This document shows, piece after piece, positions 48,258 through 56,100 of a stretch of DNA of 64,000 nt. Positions within the stretch are counted from its first letter, which is position 1. The number at the start of each line of letters is the position of its first letter. The stretch comes from Podarcis pityusensis (lineage: Eukaryota): assembly GCA_964106645.2 (NCBI GenBank), contig OZ067046.1. One strand, 5' to 3'. The position numbers were made by a program, and so were the translations under genes. The notes beneath the pieces are model-generated. The model searched no databases. It was given only the letters and a program-made list of their open reading frames with translations, and was not told the DNA's origin.

Positions 48258-48326
48258 GTAGGATTTATTGAGATGCATTTTTAATGCAACACTAATGCTG
48301 AAATCTAAATGATATTTGTTAGTTTG

Positions 48327-49082
48327 TGTCAGAGTTGCTTCCAGATCCTAGCTCACAGAGGATCACGCTAGCCAGCGATCATTAAATAAAAGTCTTTATT
48401 GAGTTACAGTTTCCATTCTCAAGCTGCTGCGTGCAACCCTACGTCTAATGGTTAGATCGGCGAAGCTCCATCTGAGTCTCCGCCCCTTGTACACCAACTT
48501 AATATCCTAGCCTTGCTCCACCTTTTCCGCCTGACTGTTCTTCTCTGGGTCCCTCTGCCCCCCGGGGTCTCTTCCTTCCGGGATTCCGCTGACGCTGACC
48601 CCCCTGACTCTTCTCCCTCCTTTCGGCAGGCTTTAGGACCTGGCTCCCTTTCCGGGCTGCCTACTGCGCCACCTTCCTGTGCATTTGAACTTGTCGCGCG
48701 CGCCCAACCTTCCACCTTCCGTCTGACCGTTTCTTCGCTCCCCGATGGAGGTGTGGCCACTCCTGACTCGTGCCCTCCCCCCTGTTGTGAGCTGCCAGCG
48801 CTTGATCCCTGGCGCCCTTCCTCTTCCCTGCTCTCTGGCGGTGACGCTGGTCCCGATTTCCAACTGCTCCCCTCTGAGTCCCCTCTGGCTCTATCTTCCT
48901 GGGGTGTCCCCCTAGGCTCCCCCCTTGCCCTGGCCACTGGTGCTCCTTTCTGTGAATCTTCTGATTCACTGGAAAGACTCGGAGATCTCGGGTCGTCGTC
49001 ATCACTCATCTTTTCTTCTGCCTCCTCCCCCTCGCTCTCTGTTTCCTCCCTTGCCCTTGCCTCTGCTCCTGAACCCCTGACA
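48327..49082 (-). repeat. 3' LTR (756 bp)
   Basis: Direct repeat of 54133-54894; by eye differs only by one A/G substitution and a 6-bp indel. Confidence 0.97.
48395..48400 (-). terminator. LTR polyadenylation signal AATAAA (copy in 5' LTR at 54201-54206)
   Basis: Minus-strand AATAAA about 50 nt downstream of the pol stop, near the LTR end. Confidence 0.75.
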
Positions 49083-52000
49083 TCCATCCCCCCCTCGAAG
49101 CCCCCTCTTCCCCCCTCCCCTCCTTCCGGTGCGGGATCTGGGTGCTGCTGTGTCAGGGGGACGAATGTCGGATACAGTTCGCTTCCCGTGGCGGGCCGCC
49201 ATCCGAAGTCTTCCGGTTCTTCCTCCCTGCTCTCGTTGACGACGGTCACCTCCGCTTCCATCTCTGTGCCGCCGTGCTCGAAACCCGGGTCGTCCCCGAA
49301 AACGTCCATGTCCGTCTCTCCCTCGTTGCCTTCTGGAGACGTTGCTCGTCCTGGACCCTCCAGCCACCTTCTGCGGAACTGCTCCTCTGGTCGATCATCC
49401 CACCAATACGAGGGTTCTGAAGCAGATCCCGAGGGTGACCCCTCCGGGGAACGGGCGTCTCGTGTCGGTTCCTCGTCCGAGTCGAACCCCCGGAACGTGC
49501 TGGCTGAAAGCGTGGGCGTGAAAAGCCAGTCGTCGAAAAAGTCTGCTGGCATTGGCCTATGTGGGAAGAGGGCATGAAACTCTTCTTTGAGCAGAGGTTC
49601 GTCTAAAGCGTAGCCCGGCACCCAGCTGTTGGCACTGGCCGGGGTGCCCTCCTTGGCGAGAAGGTATTCTACCCCCTCTTCCCCCCATCTGGAGTCCAAA
49701 ATCTCCGTGACTTCGTTGATGCGCTCCTCCTGTGCCACTCCCCCTTGCCCGGTTCTCTCTCGGAGCGGACCCGGTGCCGTTCCTGGTTCCTGAAACCTGT
49801 GAGGTGCCTTGTAGGGAGTGAGCACCGATCTGTGGAACACCGGATGCATTCTGGAACCCTCCGGAAGAGCCAGCCTGAAAGCCACCGGGTTGACCTGTTC
49901 TTCGACTTGGTAGGGCCCCAGTTGTTTATGCCCTAGTTTCTTCTTCGCCAACGACCTGGCCGGCACTGCGTGGGCTGCTAACCAGACCCAGTCTCCCACA
50001 TGGATCTCTTCGCCAACCCTTCTGTGTTTGTCCGCATGTATCTTGTATGCGTGTTTAGCCAGCTCCAGGTGCCGCCGCAGCTGATCGTGGACCTCCTGCA
50101 ACTCCGACGCGAACGCATCTGCTGTCTGCGGCTCCCCCTCCCCCATTCTTTCCAGTCCCGGGAAGGTTCTGGGGTACCTCCCGTTGTTGGCGAAGAACGG
50201 CGTGACCCCCGTGGACACGTGCTTCGTGTTGTTGTAGGCGAACTCGGCGAGAGGCAGGTAATCCACCCACGTCGCAGGCTGTTGATTCGCATAACATCTC
50301 AGGTACTGCTGCATGATGGCATTGACCCGCTCCGCTTGCCCGTTGGTCTGCGGGTGTCTAGCCGACGCCAGGTTGATCTTGACGTTCAGGAAGCCCATCA
50401 GCCTCTGCCAGAAGTTCGAGATGAACTGTCGCCCTCGGTCGGACAGAATAGACCGCGGCAGACCGTGAACCTTGAACACGTGGTCTATGAACAGTTTGGC
50501 GGTTTGTTCCGCCGTGGCCACCTTCGCACACGGAATGAAATGTGCCATCTTGGAGAACAAGTCCACCACCACCAGCACAGCCGTCTTGCCCCTCGAGCTG
50601 GGCAGATCCGTGACAAAGTCCAGGGCCACTCTCTCCCATGGTTCGAACGGAGTTTGCAGCGGTTCCAGCAGTCCGGCCGGCGGTCTGTGCACTGGTTTGG
50701 CCCTCTGGCAGGTGTCACACCTCGCCACGTAGTCCGCGACTTCCCCTCTCATTCCGGGCCACCAGAAGTCTCTGGCTACTAATTCCACCGTCTTCTCCTT
50801 GCCAAAGTGCCCGGCAGTGGGCGCGTCGTGCAGCTGCTGCAGTACCTTGGCGCGAAGTTCGTCTCCCGGCACGTAGATGGCCCCTTTACGGATGAGCAAA
50901 CCATCTCGCAGCTGGAACTCGTCGGTCGCTGCCGTGCCCCTGTGCACCTCTGCCATCTTTGCTTGCGCGAAGGAGTCATCCTGCAACGCTCGTCGCACCG
51001 CATCCAGGTCAACTGTTGCCGCCGCGCACGCCCACACTGTCGGTGCAAAGATGTGCATGGCGGCCGCTGGCGTTGCCTCCTCCAGATACTGTGGCTTACG
51101 GGAGAGAGCATCCGCCATGATGTTGGTGTCCCCCGGGACATATTCTATTCGGAAGTCGAAATTCGCAAAGAACTCAGCCCAACGTATCTGCCTCTGGTTC
51201 AGGAACTGTGCCGTGCGCCAGTGCTCTAGATTCTTGTGGTCCGTGCAGACCTGCACCGTGTGCTTGGCGCCGATCAGGAAGTGCCTCCACGCTTTGAACG
51301 CTGCATGAATGGCCAGCAACTCCCTGTCCCAGATGGTGTAGTTCTGTTCGGACTTGCTGAGCTTCCTTGAATAAAACGCTCCCGGCCTCCAAACCCCCTG
51401 CGGGTCTTTCTGCAGCAGGACTGCTCCCACGGCTCTGTCCGAAGCGTCTGTCTCCACCCTCATCGGCCTGCTGGGGTTGACATGAAGCAGCTGCTCTTCC
51501 GATGCGAAGAGACGCTTGAGTGCCTGAAAGGACTGCTCCGCCTGCTCTGTCCAGATGAACTTCTTTTTCTTGGAGCTGAGCGTGTCCGTGATGGCCGCTG
51601 TCTGCATCGCAAAGCCTTTGATAAACTTGCGATAGAAGTTCGCGAAGCCGACAAACCGTTGGACCTCCTTCCGGTTGCGTGGGCTTTTCCAATCCAACAC
51701 TGCTCGGACCTTGGCGCTGTCCATGGCGAGCCCTTTATCAGACAACTTGTAGCCCAGGAAATCCACCTCCGTCACGTCGAATTGGCACTTCTCCAGCTTG
51801 GCGTAAAGCCTATGTTGCTGTAGCCTGCTCAGCACTTCCTTGACGTGTCTGTCATGCTCCTGCTGCGATTCCGAAAAGATCAGGATGTCATCCAAGAAAC
51901 AGACGCACGTCTTGTAGAGGAGCCCCGCCAACACGTGATGCATGAAAGCTTGAAAAACGTGGGAGCCATTTTGCAATCCAAAAGGCATAACTCTATATTC

Positions 52001-53023
52001 GTAGGTGCCCAGGGGCGTGAACATGGCTGTCTTCCACTCATCTCCTTCCCGCATGCGAATGAGGTTGTATGCCCCTCGCAGGTCCAACTTGGTGAACACT
52101 CTGCCCTTCCGTACCTTTGCGAGGAGGTCGTCGATTCGGGGCATGGGGAAGTCCGATGGCTTGGTCACACTGTTCAAGATGCGAAAGTCCACTACAAGTC
52201 TTTTTTGGGGCGTGTCCCGCTTCTTAACAAAGAATACCGGACTGCCCCCCGCTGCCTTGGACTCTCGGATGAAACCGCGCTCCAAATTATGATCTATGAA
52301 CTCTTTGAGTTCCTGCAGTTCGTCCTCAGACATGGAATACAGCTTCCCTTTGGGCAGCGCCGCCCCCGGCAGCAGGTCAATTTTGCAGTCATATGGTCTG
52401 TGGGGGGGTAGCCTGTCTGCCTCCTTCTCGCAGAAAACCTCCAAAAATTCCGCGTACTTGTGGGGAACCGCTTGCAGCGTGCCTAGCTGCAGCTGTGACT
52501 CCTCTTCCCCTCCTTCCTGCCTGGGCACGATGCAGTGTTCAGCGCAAAAGGAAGAGCCGAAGGTCAGCTGCCTCTGGTACCAAGCCAGCGTCAGGCTGTG
52601 CTTGTCCAGCCAACTCATGCCCAATACAATGGGCGTGTCCGATAGTTGAGTGACATTGAAGCTGATGATTTCCCTGTGATTCCCAAGTCGCATCACCATT
52701 GGTGGCGTCTGCTTCACCACTTGCCCCCCTAGCAGCTCCCTGCCATCCACCGTGACAACCTGCAGGGGCAGCGTGGCAGGCAGCAACTGTATAGCGTGCC
52801 GGTCGACAAAGTCCTGCCCTATAAAGTCCGCATTGCTTCCGGAGTCAATGGTGATTGGCACGTCCATGGTGATTCCATTGGGCAGCTGGAGCGACGCGGT
52901 GAGCCTCACTACCGGTTTGGGCGGGAGGGGGTCCATGGGCTGTAAAATCTCTGGGGACTGCTTCACTGACACGTCTGGCTGGGCCCCAGTGCCTCTTCCT
53001 CCAACCAGACTCCGTCGTTTCCC
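48452..53023 (-). CDS. pol: Pol (-1 frame relative to gag): aspartic protease, RT, RNase H, integrase, GPY/F, degenerate chromodomain, long acidic tail extending into the 3' LTR
   Basis: IDSGS (52838-52846); KLDLRGAY, MPFGL, FLDD (51887-51898); VETDASD and DHKNL; H..H..CDTC zinc finger; DFVTDLP/SDRG/QAERVN DDE core; LGPYQV; no internal stop. Confidence 0.96.
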   Translation of the reverse strand, partial: GKRRSLVGGRGTGAQPDVSVKQSPEILQPMDPLPPKPVVRLTASLQLPNGITMDVPITIDSGSNADFIGQDFVDRHAIQLLPATLPLQVVTVDGRELLGGQVVKQTPPMVMRLGNHREIISFNVTQLSDTPIVLGMSWLDKHSLTLAWYQRQLTFGSSFCAEHCIVPRQEGGEEESQLQLGTLQAVPHKYAEFLEVFCEKEADRLPPHRPYDCKIDLLPGAALPKGKLYSMSEDELQELKEFIDHNLERGFIRESKAAGGSPVFFVKKRDTPQKRLVVDFRILNSVTKPSDFPMPRIDDLLAKVRKGRVFTKLDLRGAYNLIRMREGDEWKTAMFTPLGTYEYRVMPFGLQNGSHVFQAFMHHVLAGLLYKTCVCFLDDILIFSESQQEHDRHVKEVLSRLQQHRLYAKLEKCQFDVTEVDFLGYKLSDKGLAMDSAKVRAVLDWKSPRNRKEVQRFVGFANFYRKFIKGFAMQTAAITDTLSSKKKKFIWTEQAEQSFQALKRLFASEEQLLHVNPSRPMRVETDASDRAVGAVLLQKDPQGVWRPGAFYSRKLSKSEQNYTIWDRELLAIHAAFKAWRHFLIGAKHTVQVCTDHKNLEHWRTAQFLNQRQIRWAEFFANFDFRIEYVPGDTNIMADALSRKPQYLEEATPAAAMHIFAPTVWACAAATVDLDAVRRALQDDSFAQAKMAEVHRGTAATDEFQLRDGLLIRKGAIYVPGDELRAKVLQQLHDAPTAGHFGKEKTVELVARDFWWPGMRGEVADYVARCDTCQRAKPVHRPPAGLLEPLQTPFEPWERVALDFVTDLPSSRGKTAVLVVVDLFSKMAHFIPCAKVATAEQTAKLFIDHVFKVHGLPRSILSDRGRQFISNFWQRLMGFLNVKINLASARHPQTNGQAERVNAIMQQYLRCYANQQPATWVDYLPLAEFAYNNTKHVSTGVTPFFANNGRYPRTFPGLERMGEGEPQTADAFASELQEVHDQLRRHLELAKHAYKIHADKHRRVGEEIHVGDWVWLAAHAVPARSLAKKKLGHKQLGPYQVEEQVNPVAFRLALPEGSRMHPVFHRSVLTPYKAPHRFQEPGTAPGPLRERTGQGGVAQEERINEVTEILDSRWGEEGVEYLLAKEGTPASANSWVPGYALDEPLLKEEFHALFPHRPMPADFFDDWLFTPTLSASTFRGFDSDEEPTRDARSPEGSPSGSASEPSYWWDDRPEEQFRRRWLEGPGRATSPEGNEGETDMDVFGDDPGFEHGGTEMEAEVTVVNESREEEPEDFGWRPATGSELYPTFVPLTQQHPDPAPEGGEGGRGGFEGGMDVRGSGAEARAREETESEGEEAEEKMSDDDDPRSPSLSSESEDSQKGAPVARARGEPRGTPQEDRARGDSEGSSWKSGPASPPESREEEGRQGSSAGSSQQGGGHESGVATPPSGSEETVRRKVEGWARATSSNAQEGGAVGSPEREPGPKACRKEGEESGGSASAESRKEETPGGRGTQRRTVRRKRWSKARILSWCTRGGDSDGASPI
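49083..49096 (-). promoter_or_regulatory. Polypurine tract
   Basis: Minus strand GAGGGGGGGATGGA directly abuts TGTCAG of the 3' LTR. Confidence 0.9.
52951..53023 (-). promoter_or_regulatory. -1 programmed ribosomal frameshift signal (G GGA AAC + predicted H-type pseudoknot)
   Basis: Slippery heptamer at 53017-53023 in gag frame; 6-nt spacer; stem 1 GUCUGGUUGG/CCAGCCAGAC; stem 2 CUGGGG/CCCCAG; the -1 frame is the pol frame. Confidence 0.88.
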
Positions 53024-54039
53024 TGCTGTGGTTGTCCTTGCTGCGTTGCTGCAGTTACCATTGCTGAGGCTGCAGTGTGCTTGTGGAGCCTCTGGGGACA
53101 CTCTTTCGCCATATGCTGTGGATCATCGCAGATGTAACACTTCCTGTTCCCTCTAGGAGGCTTCGCTTTCACTGCTGCCGGTGCTAGGGCTCTGGCTGCT
53201 GACTGAGCCCTTGCACCTCCAACCTCCATAGGTTCCGCTCCTCCTCCTGGCGGAGGCGTGGATTGCGCACGCGCTGCTTCTCTGGGAAGGAAGGAGGAGC
53301 CCCTGGCTGGTTCGCGCCCTCCACGCCCTTCGCCACTGCTCCACGGACGTCCTTCCAGCCGCACCCCCACCGCCAGCGCCCTCTGAACGATCTCCTGCGT
53401 GGTCCGGGGTCTCTCCCCCCTCGCAATTTCATCTTTAACCGAGCCGTGCAATCCCTCCCAAAACAGGTCTCTTACAGGAGCCGAATCTCTGTCCCATTCC
53501 AGAGCACTGACCAAAGCGAAAAAGCGGGCATGGTACTGCCTTACGCTGGCCCTCCCTTGCTTCAGTCCATGTATCTGCTGCCGAGCAAGATCCACGTCAA
53601 TGCTTGACAAAAAGCACCCATCCATCGCTTTAATAAAGGCATCCGCATTTTGGAGCGCCGGATCCTTATCTCTCCACAAATTGCGCAGCCATGCTTTAGC
53701 ATCTCCATGCAAATGGGACATGATGAATCCCACCTTCTCTTGCTCATCTCTAAAGTCTTTGTTCAGCAGTTGCAGTGCACACATTACATCTGCTCTAAAG
53801 TTGGGGTACTGTTGCAAATTCCCATCGAAGTGAGAGACCAAACCGCCTGTTCGTCTCCCCAACCCAATCCCCTCCGGTTTGGGTGTCAGTTGCCCTTGCT
53901 TCGTAAGCACTTCCAACCTGACCTGGAGATCCCTGTAGGCGGCAGCTGCGTCCTCCTCTCTCTTCCTGGATGCAAGAGCCTCGGCATTCAGGCGCGACAC
54001 TGCTTCTCTGAGTTCCACTATCTGCTGTTCGGCCGTCAT
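52963..54039 (-). CDS. gag: Gag (358 aa from ATG 54039): coiled-coil-like N-terminus, retrotransposon capsid, EPMEVG motif, CCHC zinc knuckle
   Basis: First ATG in the ORF has context ACAACATGA; zinc knuckle CYICDDPQHMAKEC (53098-53139); EPMEVG resembles the EPMQ/E motif of PEG10/sushi-type Gags. Confidence 0.93.
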   Translation of the reverse strand: MTAEQQIVELREAVSRLNAEALASRKREEDAAAAYRDLQVRLEVLTKQGQLTPKPEGIGLGRRTGGLVSHFDGNLQQYPNFRADVMCALQLLNKDFRDEQEKVGFIMSHLHGDAKAWLRNLWRDKDPALQNADAFIKAMDGCFLSSIDVDLARQQIHGLKQGRASVRQYHARFFALVSALEWDRDSAPVRDLFWEGLHGSVKDEIARGERPRTTQEIVQRALAVGVRLEGRPWSSGEGRGGREPARGSSFLPREAARAQSTPPPGGGAEPMEVGGARAQSAARALAPAAVKAKPPRGNRKCYICDDPQHMAKECPQRLHKHTAASAMVTAATQQGQPQQGNDGVWLEEEALGPSQTCQ

Positions 54040-54118
54040 GTTGTCTGCCGTTCGTGAGCTCGCTAGTAGGCACCCGCTTTCTCTCCTCTCCGCGAGGCTG
54101 TAGATGCCCACAATTTAA

Positions 54119-54130
54119 CAGATGGAGCTT
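54119..54130 (-). promoter_or_regulatory. Primer-binding site, self-priming type (AAGCTCCATCTG)
   Basis: Starts 2 nt inside the 5' LTR end; no TGG; exact reverse complement of LTR segment 54269-54280. Confidence 0.88.
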
Positions 54131-54132
54131 AC

Positions 54133-54894
54133 TGTCAGAGTTGCTTCCAGATCCTAGCTCACAGAGGATCACGCTAGCCAGCGATCATTAAATAAAAGTC
54201 TTTATTGAGTTACAGTTTCCATTCTCAAGCTGCTGCGTGCAACCCTACGTCTAATGGTTAGATCGGCGAAGCTCCATCTGAGTCTCCGCCCCTTGTACAC
54301 CAACTTAATATCCTAGCCTTGCTCCACCTTTTCCGCCTGACTGTTCTTCTCTGGGTCCCTCTGCCCCCCGGGGTCTCTTCCTTCCGGGATTCCTCTGACG
54401 CTGACGCTGACCCCCCTGACTCTTCTCCCTCCTTTCGGCGGGCTTTAGGACCTGGCTCCCTTTCCGGGCTGCCTACTGCGCCACCTTCCTGTGCATTTGA
54501 ACTTGTCGCGCGCGCCCAACCTTCCACCTTCCGTCTGACCGTTTCTTCGCTCCCCGATGGAGGTGTGGCCACTCCTGACTCGTGCCCTCCCCCCTGTTGT
54601 GAGCTGCCAGCGCTTGATCCCTGGCGCCCTTCCTCTTCCCTGCTCTCTGGCGGTGACGCTGGTCCCGATTTCCAACTGCTCCCCTCTGAGTCCCCTCTGG
54701 CTCTATCTTCCTGGGGTGTCCCCCTAGGCTCCCCCCTTGCCCTGGCCACTGGTGCTCCTTTCTGTGAATCTTCTGATTCACTGGAAAGACTCGGAGATCT
54801 CGGGTCGTCGTCATCACTCATCTTTTCTTCTGCCTCCTCCCCCTCGCTCTCTGTTTCCTCCCTTGCCCTTGCCTCTGCTCCTGAACCCCTGACA
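54133..54894 (-). repeat. 5' LTR (762 bp)
   Basis: Direct repeat of 48327-49082; TG...CA ends with a 6-bp terminal inverted repeat. Confidence 0.97.
54280..54310 (-). promoter_or_regulatory. Predicted LTR core promoter: TATTAA box, GGGGCGG GC box, TSS near 54280
   Basis: TATTAA (54305-54310) lies 25-30 nt upstream of the first base of the self-primer; GC box at 54286-54292. Confidence 0.7.
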
Positions 54895-56100
54895 GTTTGC
54901 TTTTTATATTTTCAGTCCAACCCTTTTCTCAGATTGTGCTTCATAAAACACACACACATGCCAAACATTCTAAATTTTAATTGCTTAATCCTGGTTGTAA
55001 ATGCGCAAAACAAATTCTGCAGTTGTGGTGCAGCTACTGTTTCTCTTTCTCTCTCTCTCCCCCCCCCCCATTCTCCCTCCTTGCTATTCGACCATGTTGC
55101 TTACCCAGTGTTCAGAAGTCACTGCTATGGGTTGTGTGCTTTTCAACTCTGGGGTTCCTTGATGTGACTGCTGCAAGGGAGTGGTAGATGTGCTGTTGAT
55201 CATGCGCCAAGTTCCATAAGGCAAAAGTTAGACTCTGCACTTGCCTGTTGGGCTTCTTGTGCAAATAGTGTACCCTAAACTGCACCCCAGAGTCCTCTGT
55301 AGCAGGGATGGAGAATTGCACACCCCCAGCACCTGTGGATTCAGCCTGTGGCCTCTTCCTCATTAGCTCTGTCTGTCTCCTCAATCTCACAGATACTTTC
55401 ATTCTAGCACTTAAGCTGCTGATTTGCATTTGGCCCTGTCCCCCTCCTCTCTGCCCCAGGCAACACCAAATCAGTTTGGTGAGGCTCATTTGTTAAGCAG
55501 AGCTGACAACATCAGAAAGGAAGGAAGGTGGAAAAGGGAAGTGCCAGCCAAAGAAAGCTCCACTAGAAAGGTTAGGGAGCGGGGGAAGTGTGTTCTCTAT
55601 AAAGGGCTTGCCCCAATTGTATTGAATCAGCAGCTCTCAAAGCTTCATTTATTTACCTTTCCTAGCAGGTTCTGTTCTTCAGTTGGCATTTCTGTTCTTC
55701 AGTAATCTGTTGTCTCATATCTTTATCCCGTTTCATTTTGACGCCCACCTCTGTATTGGATCAGGGTATACAATTCATAATACAGTCATCTTTTCCCCTG
55801 GGAAATGACATATTTGCTGTTAGCAAGATGACGAGTGCTTTTGTGGATACCTGGTACTCAGGGTGGGGGCGCTCATTAGGACGTCTTGGTCACAAATCAA
55901 ACTTTAGTGCAAGTCTTTGTATGGTGTGTAATCACTATTGAGCAGGAACATATGCATGATTGCATGTTCCTCGTCTTTTCCCATCTTACACAGTTCATTT
56001 TCCACCTTACGCAGTTTGTTTGTTCAGGGTTGTTGCTGAAGAAATGTGTTTTAGAATGCTACTAAGAACTGTTATGTTCTCTGTTTCCTTTTAATCATAG

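What the first reader, a model, noticed from the sequence alone, without database searches (positions are those of the whole stretch)
54119..54310. tRNA-independent self-priming signature in an intact lizard LTR element
Seen: after the 5' LTR end (CTGACA) the minus strand reads GT-AAGCTCCATCTG rather than a TGG-starting tRNA site. That 12-mer is the exact complement of CAGATGGAGCTT inside the LTR (54280-54269), which begins 25-30 nt downstream of a TATTAA box, where transcription should start. The geometry is right: the 3' end of the 12-mer points toward U5. Established: fission yeast Tf1 primes reverse transcription with the first 11 nt of its own mRNA after RNase H cleavage, and this has been proposed for vertebrate sushi-group elements. 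Inference: this young, intact copy is a tractable amniote example, and its primer sequence is also protein-coding in the 3' LTR.
Basis: partly seen in the sequence, partly recalled or inferred. Interest (0 to 1): 0.85.

Follow-up and report, generated by a model that had tools for sequence, protein, structure and literature searches.

The report
Self-priming lizard LTR retrotransposon, Tf1/sushi type
A young, apparently intact Ty3/gypsy chromovirus in a lacertid lizard carries an 11-base site just after its 5' LTR that pairs with the predicted first 11 bases of its own RNA. Sister families keep this pairing through matched changes on both sides, so it very probably primes its own reverse transcription, as is already described for the Tf1/sushi group.

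Summary
On the minus strand the 5' LTR ends CTGACA at 54133. A GT spacer follows, then AAGCTCCATCTG (54130-54119), the exact complement of CAGATGGAGCTT in the LTR (54280-54269), 30 nt after a TATTAA.

The conserved unit is 11 nt, not 12. Six related loci from Podarcis-type lizards hold four different primer/PBS pairs: AGATGGAGCTT, AGATGGGACTT, AGACGGGTCTT and AGAGGGGACTT, each with its exact complement. The pairing is always 11 nt, sits 149-150 nt downstream and follows a GT spacer. The 12th pair occurs only in this copy.

Three distant relatives show the same layout with unrelated sequences: a gecko element at 44% Pol identity and two others at about 44%. No TGG-type tRNA site is present or conserved. 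A second stem, between the U5 end and R, also covaries.

This is strong sequence-level support for Tf1-type self-priming. The transcription start could not be tested: the RNA reads showed no pile-up of read starts and almost no depth over the PBS.

Self-priming is already regarded as a common feature of Tf1/sushi elements, vertebrate ones included, so this is a new member of a known kind. First readers of this scan flagged the same signature about 40 times elsewhere in this genome.

Side result: U3 encodes a conserved C-terminal tail of Pol (dN/dS about 0.22-0.28) that ends just after the primer.

The parts
54895..54899 (-). Target-site duplication CAAAC, upstream copy
   Evidence: the same 5 nt flank both LTRs.
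54133..54894 (-). 5' LTR, 762 nt, TG...CA ends. U3 is 54894-54280. R starts at about 54279. AATAAA lies at 54206-54201. U5 runs to 54133.
54305..54310 (-). TATA-like TATTAA, 31 nt before A 54279. Degenerate in sister families.
54269..54279 (-). Predicted self-primer AGATGGAGCTT, taken to be the first 11 nt of the RNA. It is preceded by the conserved TC of an Inr-like TCAGA.
54131..54132 (-). GT spacer between the LTR end (CA) and the PBS
   Evidence: The offset is 2 nt in every locus examined.
54120..54130 (-). Primer-binding site AAGCTCCATCT, the exact complement of 54279-54269. G 54119 adds a 12th pair in this copy only.
54134..54147 (-). U5 end, which pairs with R nt about 33-42 (a second duplex next to the PBS duplex)
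   Evidence: (columns 34-45 with 140-149, three pairs with changes on both sides).
52963..54039 (-). gag, 358 aa, with capsid and CCHC zinc-knuckle domains
   Evidence: Retrotrans_gag, Ty3_capsid, DUF4939/RTL1-8_LDOC, zf-CCHC.
48452..53101 (-). pol, 1549 codons in the -1 frame relative to gag. It holds PR, RT, RNase H, integrase, a Tf2-1-type SH3 domain, a weak chromodomain and a long tail. It runs 631 nt into the 3' LTR (49082 to the stop at 48454-48452).
49083..49096 (-). Polypurine tract GAGGGGGGGATGGA, directly before the 3' LTR
48327..49082 (-). 3' LTR, 756 nt. It holds the second copy of the primer sequence at 48473-48463 and the pol stop TAA at 48454-48452.
48322..48326 (-). Target-site duplication CAAAC, downstream copy

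Best explanation
This is a recently inserted, apparently intact Ty3/gypsy chromovirus of the Tf1/sushi type that starts reverse transcription without a tRNA.

Transcription is predicted to begin at A 54279 (minus strand), inside an Inr-like TCAGA and 31 nt after a TATA-like box. The first 11 nt of the RNA (AGAUGGAGCUU) fold back onto the 11-nt site that lies 2 nt after the 5' LTR. A neighbouring stem between the U5 end and R helps to hold this fold.

By analogy with Tf1, RNase H would cut after nt 11, and the freed 3' end would prime minus-strand DNA through U5 and R. The PBS of the new copy is then copied back from the primer.

Shown here: the complementarity, its position, its covariation across families, the absence of a tRNA-type site, and the second covarying stem. 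Inferred: the start site, the cut, and the priming itself.
For: - Exact complement at 54280-54269 and 54130-54119. Only 2 of 2000 LTR shuffles matched it.
- Seven loci of related lizard families hold four different 11-mers, each with its exact complement 149-150 nt downstream after a GT spacer.
- RNAalifold keeps 11 of 11 pairs in 7 of 7 sequences. Pairs 4, 7 and 8 are changed on both sides, and none is broken.
- The 12th position is unpaired in 6 of 7 loci, which gives the same 11-nt length as Tf1.
- The gecko element L001 (10 nt, 32 nt after TATATAT, 13 of 2000 shuffles), L002 (10 nt) and L004 (9 nt) show the same layout with unrelated sequences, always at offset 2.
- A second stem, U5 end with R nt 33-42, recurs at the same place and covaries.
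- Pol carries the Tf2-1-type SH3 domain and gag carries the RTL1-8/LDOC-type domain.
- The literature calls self-priming a common feature of Tf1/sushi elements, from fungi to vertebrates.
Against: - There is no direct evidence for the RNA 5' end. The reads from three RNA runs showed no pile-up of starts and almost no depth over 54005-54127.
- The TATA-like box is not conserved in sister families.
- The third duplex of the Tf1 'pretzel', between the sequence after the PBS and the LTR, was not detected.
- The minimum-energy fold of 2 of 7 leaders does not contain the primer/PBS duplex.
- The fold of the window leader is not clearly more stable than shuffles (z = -1.6).
- No host tRNA set could be compared.
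Confidence: 0.85

Rival explanations
1. The duplex between the 5' end and the PBS is a structural element of the leader, for example for packaging, dimerisation or translation control. Priming would then be done by something else, such as a tRNA fragment that anneals nearby.
For: The leader forms an extended conserved structure with other covarying stems. Priming itself was not observed. The third Tf1-type duplex is missing.
Against: - The site lies exactly where a PBS must lie, 2 nt after the LTR's CA, in all 11 loci examined.
- No other candidate PBS is conserved: the sequence after the 11-mer differs between families.
- Perfect complementarity with no one-sided intermediates in 7 of 7 loci is what copying the PBS from the primer predicts. 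Slow compensatory evolution of a stem would leave some intermediates.
Confidence: 0.08
2. A conventional host tRNA, or an internal tRNA fragment, primes at or near 54130-54100, and the match to the LTR is incidental.
For: The host tRNA repertoire could not be searched. No tRNA gene lies in the window or in any fetched locus. A TGG occurs 21 nt after the LTR (54112-54110, in TTGTGGGCATC).
Against: - No TGG lies at offset 0-6.
- The downstream TGGGCATC is absent from L007, L010, L012 and L013.
- Four different PBS sequences in close families would need four different tRNAs, each also matched by the family's own LTR.
- The chance of the LTR match is about 0.001 per locus and it is repeated in independent families.
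Confidence: 0.04
3. The complementarity is a chance match in a purine-rich LTR.
For: U3 is compositionally skewed (40% G, 30% A, 9.6% T), which raises the rate of chance matches somewhat.
Against: Shuffles that keep composition give 2 of 2000. The same position, length and spacer recur with compensating changes in other families.
Confidence: 0.01

Closest known systems
Tf1 / Tf2 of Schizosaccharomyces pombe (self-primed reverse transcription; Levin 1995, Lin and Levin 1997, as cited)
   Same: An 11-nt self-primer lies at the predicted RNA 5' end and is complementary to a PBS just after the 5' LTR's CA. There is no tRNA-type PBS. A neighbouring duplex forms between PBS-adjacent U5 and the LTR sequence after the primer. 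Pol has the order PR-RT-RH-IN plus a Tf2-1-type SH3 domain.
   Different: - The host is an amniote.
- gag and pol are separate frames joined by a -1 shift, not a single ORF.
- The third 'pretzel' duplex was not found.
- pol continues through U3 into R.
- Nothing here has been tested biochemically.
Vertebrate Tf1/sushi-group chromoviruses (sushi-ichi, Amn-san and others; Butler et al. 2001, J Mol Evol 52:260, cited)
   Same: They are vertebrate chromoviruses for which self-priming and the 'pretzel' leader were proposed from sequence. [quoted passage not shown]
   Different: I could not read Butler et al., so I cannot say whether lacertid or any squamate elements were analysed there. The natural series of four compensating primer/PBS pairs among sister families, and the coding U3, are not mentioned in the papers I could read.
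Tj1 of S. japonicus; Tosmo and Tcry elements; plant Tcn1-clade chromoviruses
   Same: Self-priming was predicted from the same kind of complementarity between LTR and PBS.
   Different: The hosts are fungi and plants, with unrelated LTR sequences.
Group A CRM centromeric chromoviruses of plants
   Same: [quoted passage not shown]
   Different: They use tRNA-type priming, are plant elements, and have an unrelated tail sequence. Here the coding part spans all of U3 and ends inside R, over the self-primer.

Membership tests
Tf1/sushi-type self-priming LTR retrotransposons | PBS immediately after the 5' LTR is complementary to a sequence of the element's own LTR, not to a tRNA 3' end | tested here: met
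   The exact 11-nt (here 12-nt) complement starts 2 nt after the LTR. No TGG lies at offset 0-6.
Tf1/sushi-type self-priming LTR retrotransposons | The complementary sequence is the very 5' end of the element's mRNA | tested here: inconclusive
   Position fits the prediction: 31 nt after a TATA-like box, within the conserved Inr-like TCAGA, and about 75 nt before AATAAA. RNA reads showed no pile-up of starts.
Tf1/sushi-type self-priming LTR retrotransposons | Primer and PBS change together among relatives, because the PBS is copied from the primer | tested here: met
   Four distinct pairs in 7 loci, 0 broken pairs, 3 positions changed on both sides. Distant relatives have unrelated but self-complementary pairs.
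Tf1/sushi-type self-priming LTR retrotransposons | Three-duplex 'pretzel' leader structure | tested here: inconclusive
   The central duplex and the U5-end/R duplex are present and covary. The duplex that would involve the sequence after the PBS is no better than shuffles.
Tf1/sushi-type self-priming LTR retrotransposons | RNase H cut after nt 11 releases the primer, and minus-strand DNA starts from it | not testable with these tools
   This needs biochemistry on replication intermediates.
Tf1/sushi-type self-priming LTR retrotransposons | No host tRNA matches the PBS | not testable with these tools
   No tRNA gene lies in the window or in the fetched loci, and no host tRNA set was at hand.
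Chromoviruses (Ty3/gypsy with a chromodomain integrase), Tf1/sushi clade | Pol order PR-RT-RH-IN, with an SH3-like and a chromodomain C-terminus | tested here: met
   Pfam finds RVP_2, RVT_1, RT_RNaseH, Integrase_H2C2, rve and SH3_Tf2-1. The chromodomain hit is only weak in this copy (E = 0.012, 16 bits, below the cut-off). Relatives at 49-60% identity carry PF00385.
Chromoviruses (Ty3/gypsy with a chromodomain integrase), Tf1/sushi clade | Phylogenetic placement with Tf1 and sushi-ichi reference sequences | not tested
   No reference Tf1 or sushi-ichi sequence was available from the tools. There is only indirect support: the SH3_Tf2-1 and RTL1-8_LDOC/DUF4939 domains, and best non-lizard hits in amphibian and fungal chromoviruses.

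The most novel reading that the evidence does not exclude
This lacertid family cluster is a currently or very recently active amniote self-priming lineage. One short stretch of the LTR serves at once as core promoter and start site, as self-primer, and as the coding end of a conserved Pol tail encoded by U3. The four natural primer/PBS variants then record how a primer change is passed to the PBS through replication. That would give a natural test of the rule that the PBS is copied from the primer, outside yeast.
Probability: 0.45. Interest if true: 0.5.

Novelty: new member of a known kind. Interest (0 to 1): 0.35.

Why it matters
Self-primed reverse transcription has been shown experimentally only in fission-yeast elements. 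For vertebrates it rests on sequence inference.

This lizard family cluster adds unusually clean comparative evidence: four compensating primer/PBS pairs, a fixed 11-nt length, and a covarying neighbouring stem. The copies are young and have open frames.

For annotation, LTR finders that require a tRNA-type PBS will misjudge these abundant squamate elements.

The coding U3 is an extra constraint on LTR evolution that is worth recording.

None of this changes the accepted picture of the Tf1/sushi group.

Tried and rejected
- RNA evidence for the start site. One search for runs and one lay of reads (two bulk RNA-seq runs, one single-cell run, one contig set) gave no pile-up of starts or ends. 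Depth was near zero over the leader and PBS. Both strands were covered, and the junctions at the LTR edges were heterogeneous. This looks like LTR copies carried inside host transcripts, so it says nothing for or against a start at 54279.
- Host tRNA comparison. ARAGORN found no tRNA gene in the window or in five loci, so the test could not be run.
- TGGGCATC 21 nt after the LTR as a displaced tRNA PBS. Rejected, because it is absent from sister families.
- The 12-nt reading. Rejected in favour of 11 nt.
- TATA conservation. Not met in sister families.
- Third 'pretzel' duplex. Not detected.
- Original papers. Lin and Levin 1997 and Atwood-Moore 2006 are not held. Butler 2001 was not available.
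- Literature searches. A search for lizard plus self-priming found nothing. Two searches failed on term format and one found nothing.
- Atlas search with the Pol tail. No usable hit.
- The count of structure pairs. Not used, because it needs a long typed dot-bracket string.

The consensus line that DNA alignment prints for the 165-nt leader was ignored.

Full report
**Anatomy**

The finding lies in a complete LTR retrotransposon on the minus strand.
- The 5' LTR is 54894-54133 (762 nt) and the 3' LTR is 49082-48327 (756 nt). Both have TG...CA ends and are flanked by the 5-nt duplication CAAAC.
- The two LTRs differ by one substitution and one 6-nt indel, so the insertion is young. At commonly assumed squamate rates this is of the order of a million years or less, a rough inference from my own knowledge.
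- gag (54039-52963, 358 aa) and pol (53101-48452, 1549 codons, -1 frame) are open.
- In pol, Pfam finds protease, RT, RNase H, integrase and the Tf2-1-type SH3 domain. In gag it finds the Ty3 capsid, RTL1-8/LDOC-type and zinc-knuckle domains. A chromodomain is only weakly recognisable.
- The nearest proteins are from Podarcis muralis (95%), then Anolis (49%), gecko (48% by blastp; 44% by tblastn on its locus), amphibians and fungi. The host is therefore a lacertid lizard, and the element is a vertebrate chromovirus.

**The observation**

After the LTR's CTGACA come GT and then AAGCTCCATCTG (54130-54119). Its exact complement CAGATGGAGCTT lies at 54280-54269, 30 nt after the first T of TATTAA (54310-54305) and about 75 nt before AATAAA (54206-54201). 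Only 2 of 2000 composition-preserving shuffles of the LTR gave a complement that long within 6 nt of the LTR end.

**Relatives and covariation**

I fetched DNA of relatives through their gag, pol and LTR-encoded proteins. Seven loci, the window included, carry both the LTR and the PBS of families whose gag is 62-99% identical to this one.
- The window, L005, L010 and L011 carry AGATGGAGCTT with AAGCTCCATCT. L010 and L011 are from Podarcis lilfordi.
- L007 carries AGATGGGACTT with AAGTCCCATCT.
- L012 carries AGACGGGTCTT with AAGACCCGTCT.
- L013 carries AGAGGGGACTT with AAGTCCCCTCT.

In every case the match is exactly 11 nt. It lies 149-150 nt downstream, after a GT spacer, and the LTR copy is preceded by TC. 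The base that would make a 12th pair is C in six loci and G only in the window.

RNAalifold on the seven leaders keeps all 11 pairs in all sequences, with changes on both sides at three positions and no broken pair.

Three distant relatives repeat the layout with unrelated sequences, always at offset 2.
- The gecko element L001 has a 10-nt match 32 nt after TATATAT (13 of 2000 shuffles).
- L002 has a 10-nt match 34 nt after TATATC.
- L004 has a 9-nt match 29 nt after TAAATAG.

**What the covariation means**

In Tf1-type replication the PBS of a new copy is copied from the primer. The cited work reports that the self-primer is not removed (reference 61). A change at the R start is then handed to the PBS within a couple of replication rounds. 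This step is my inference from the established mechanism.

That predicts what is seen: perfect concordance without one-sided intermediates. A tRNA primer would instead reset every family's PBS to the same tRNA sequence. The sequence after the 11-mer is not conserved among families, and no TGG-type site is shared. The host tRNA set could not be searched.

**Leader structure**

Next to the central duplex, the last bases of U5 pair with R nt about 33-42. This occurs at the same place in most loci and covaries at three pairs. It corresponds to one of the two flanking duplexes of the Tf1 'pretzel'. A U5 hairpin also covaries. The duplex expected for the sequence after the PBS was not found. Two of seven leaders have a different minimum-energy fold.

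**Transcription start**

This remains untested. Reads from two bulk RNA runs, one single-cell RNA run and one contig set were laid on 53800-55000.
- There was no pile-up of starts and almost no depth over 54005-54127.
- Both strands were covered, and many different sequences joined the LTR edges. This looks like LTR copies inside other transcripts.
- In the single-cell run, 31 reads joined the PPT region to U3, so internal parts of the family are transcribed to some extent.
- TATTAA is replaced by TCTTAA or TCTTGA in sister families.

**Coding U3**

The pol frame continues through the whole of U3 and stops 7 codons after the start of the primer: TAA at 48454-48452, or at 54260-54258 in the 5' LTR copy.
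- U3 has only 9.6% T, so open frames are favoured by composition alone.
- Even so, the frame stays open for 195-211 codons in four families. Substitutions between families pile up at third positions (for example 33/30/73), and dN/dS is 0.22-0.28. The frame is therefore really coding.
- The two P. lilfordi copies have lost the frame.
- A precedent for coding sequence that extends into the 3' LTR exists in plant CRM chromoviruses.

**Comparison with what is known**

[quoted passage not shown] All cite Butler et al. 2001, which I could not read. A full-text search for lizard with self-priming found nothing.

The scan's own index lists about 40 first-reader notes of the same signature elsewhere in this genome. 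They are unchecked notes, not evidence, but they suggest the feature is common in this genome.

**Verdict**

This is a new member of a known kind and of moderate interest. A functional test with a cloned copy is left to a person's decision.

Noticed in passing
window 49082-48452 (minus strand); same frame in the 5' LTR 54894-54258: All of U3 plus the first 7 codons of R encode a conserved C-terminal tail of Pol. The tail is acidic and serine-rich and ends in a basic stretch. Between sister families dN/dS is 0.22-0.28 with an excess of third-position changes. The stop always falls 4-7 codons after the start of the self-primer. The tail has no Pfam or Atlas match.
   Followed up: partly
window 54821-54258 (minus strand): In the 5' LTR the same frame begins with an ATG and gives a 187-aa ORF. 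Gene callers have annotated the equivalents as 'hypothetical proteins' in Podarcis lilfordi (P0132, P0133). These are LTR-encoded Pol tails, not host genes.
   Followed up: partly
window 54276 (plus-strand A>G), from reads and contigs: Other copies in the sampled lizards read AGACGGAGCTT at the primer. Their PBS could not be seen, because no read covered it. The self-priming model predicts AAGCTCCGTCT.
   Followed up: no
L006:30-40 and L008:31-41: Two contigs have a PBS that ends in CC instead of CT (AAGCTCCATCC and AAGTCCCCTCC). This implies a G rather than an A as the first RNA base, or else a terminal mismatch. Their LTRs are not on the contigs.
   Followed up: no
L007:1-24: This Logan contig begins with an Illumina-adapter-like stretch directly before the LTR. 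Its upstream 'flank' is therefore an artefact, not genome sequence.
   Followed up: no
L001:4170-4215 (gecko element): Just before the predicted primer GTGCTGGCAA lies GTTGCCAGCAG, a near-copy of the PBS. It could form a local hairpin with the primer. Its meaning is unknown.
   Followed up: no
L010:4419-10982 and L011:4203-10760: Two full-length Podarcis lilfordi copies of a sister family (LTRs 79-82% identical to the window's) keep the primer/PBS pair. They have lost the U3 reading frame through a frameshift about 55 codons into the LTR. L011 also holds a third, inverted LTR at about 15581-14861.
   Followed up: partly
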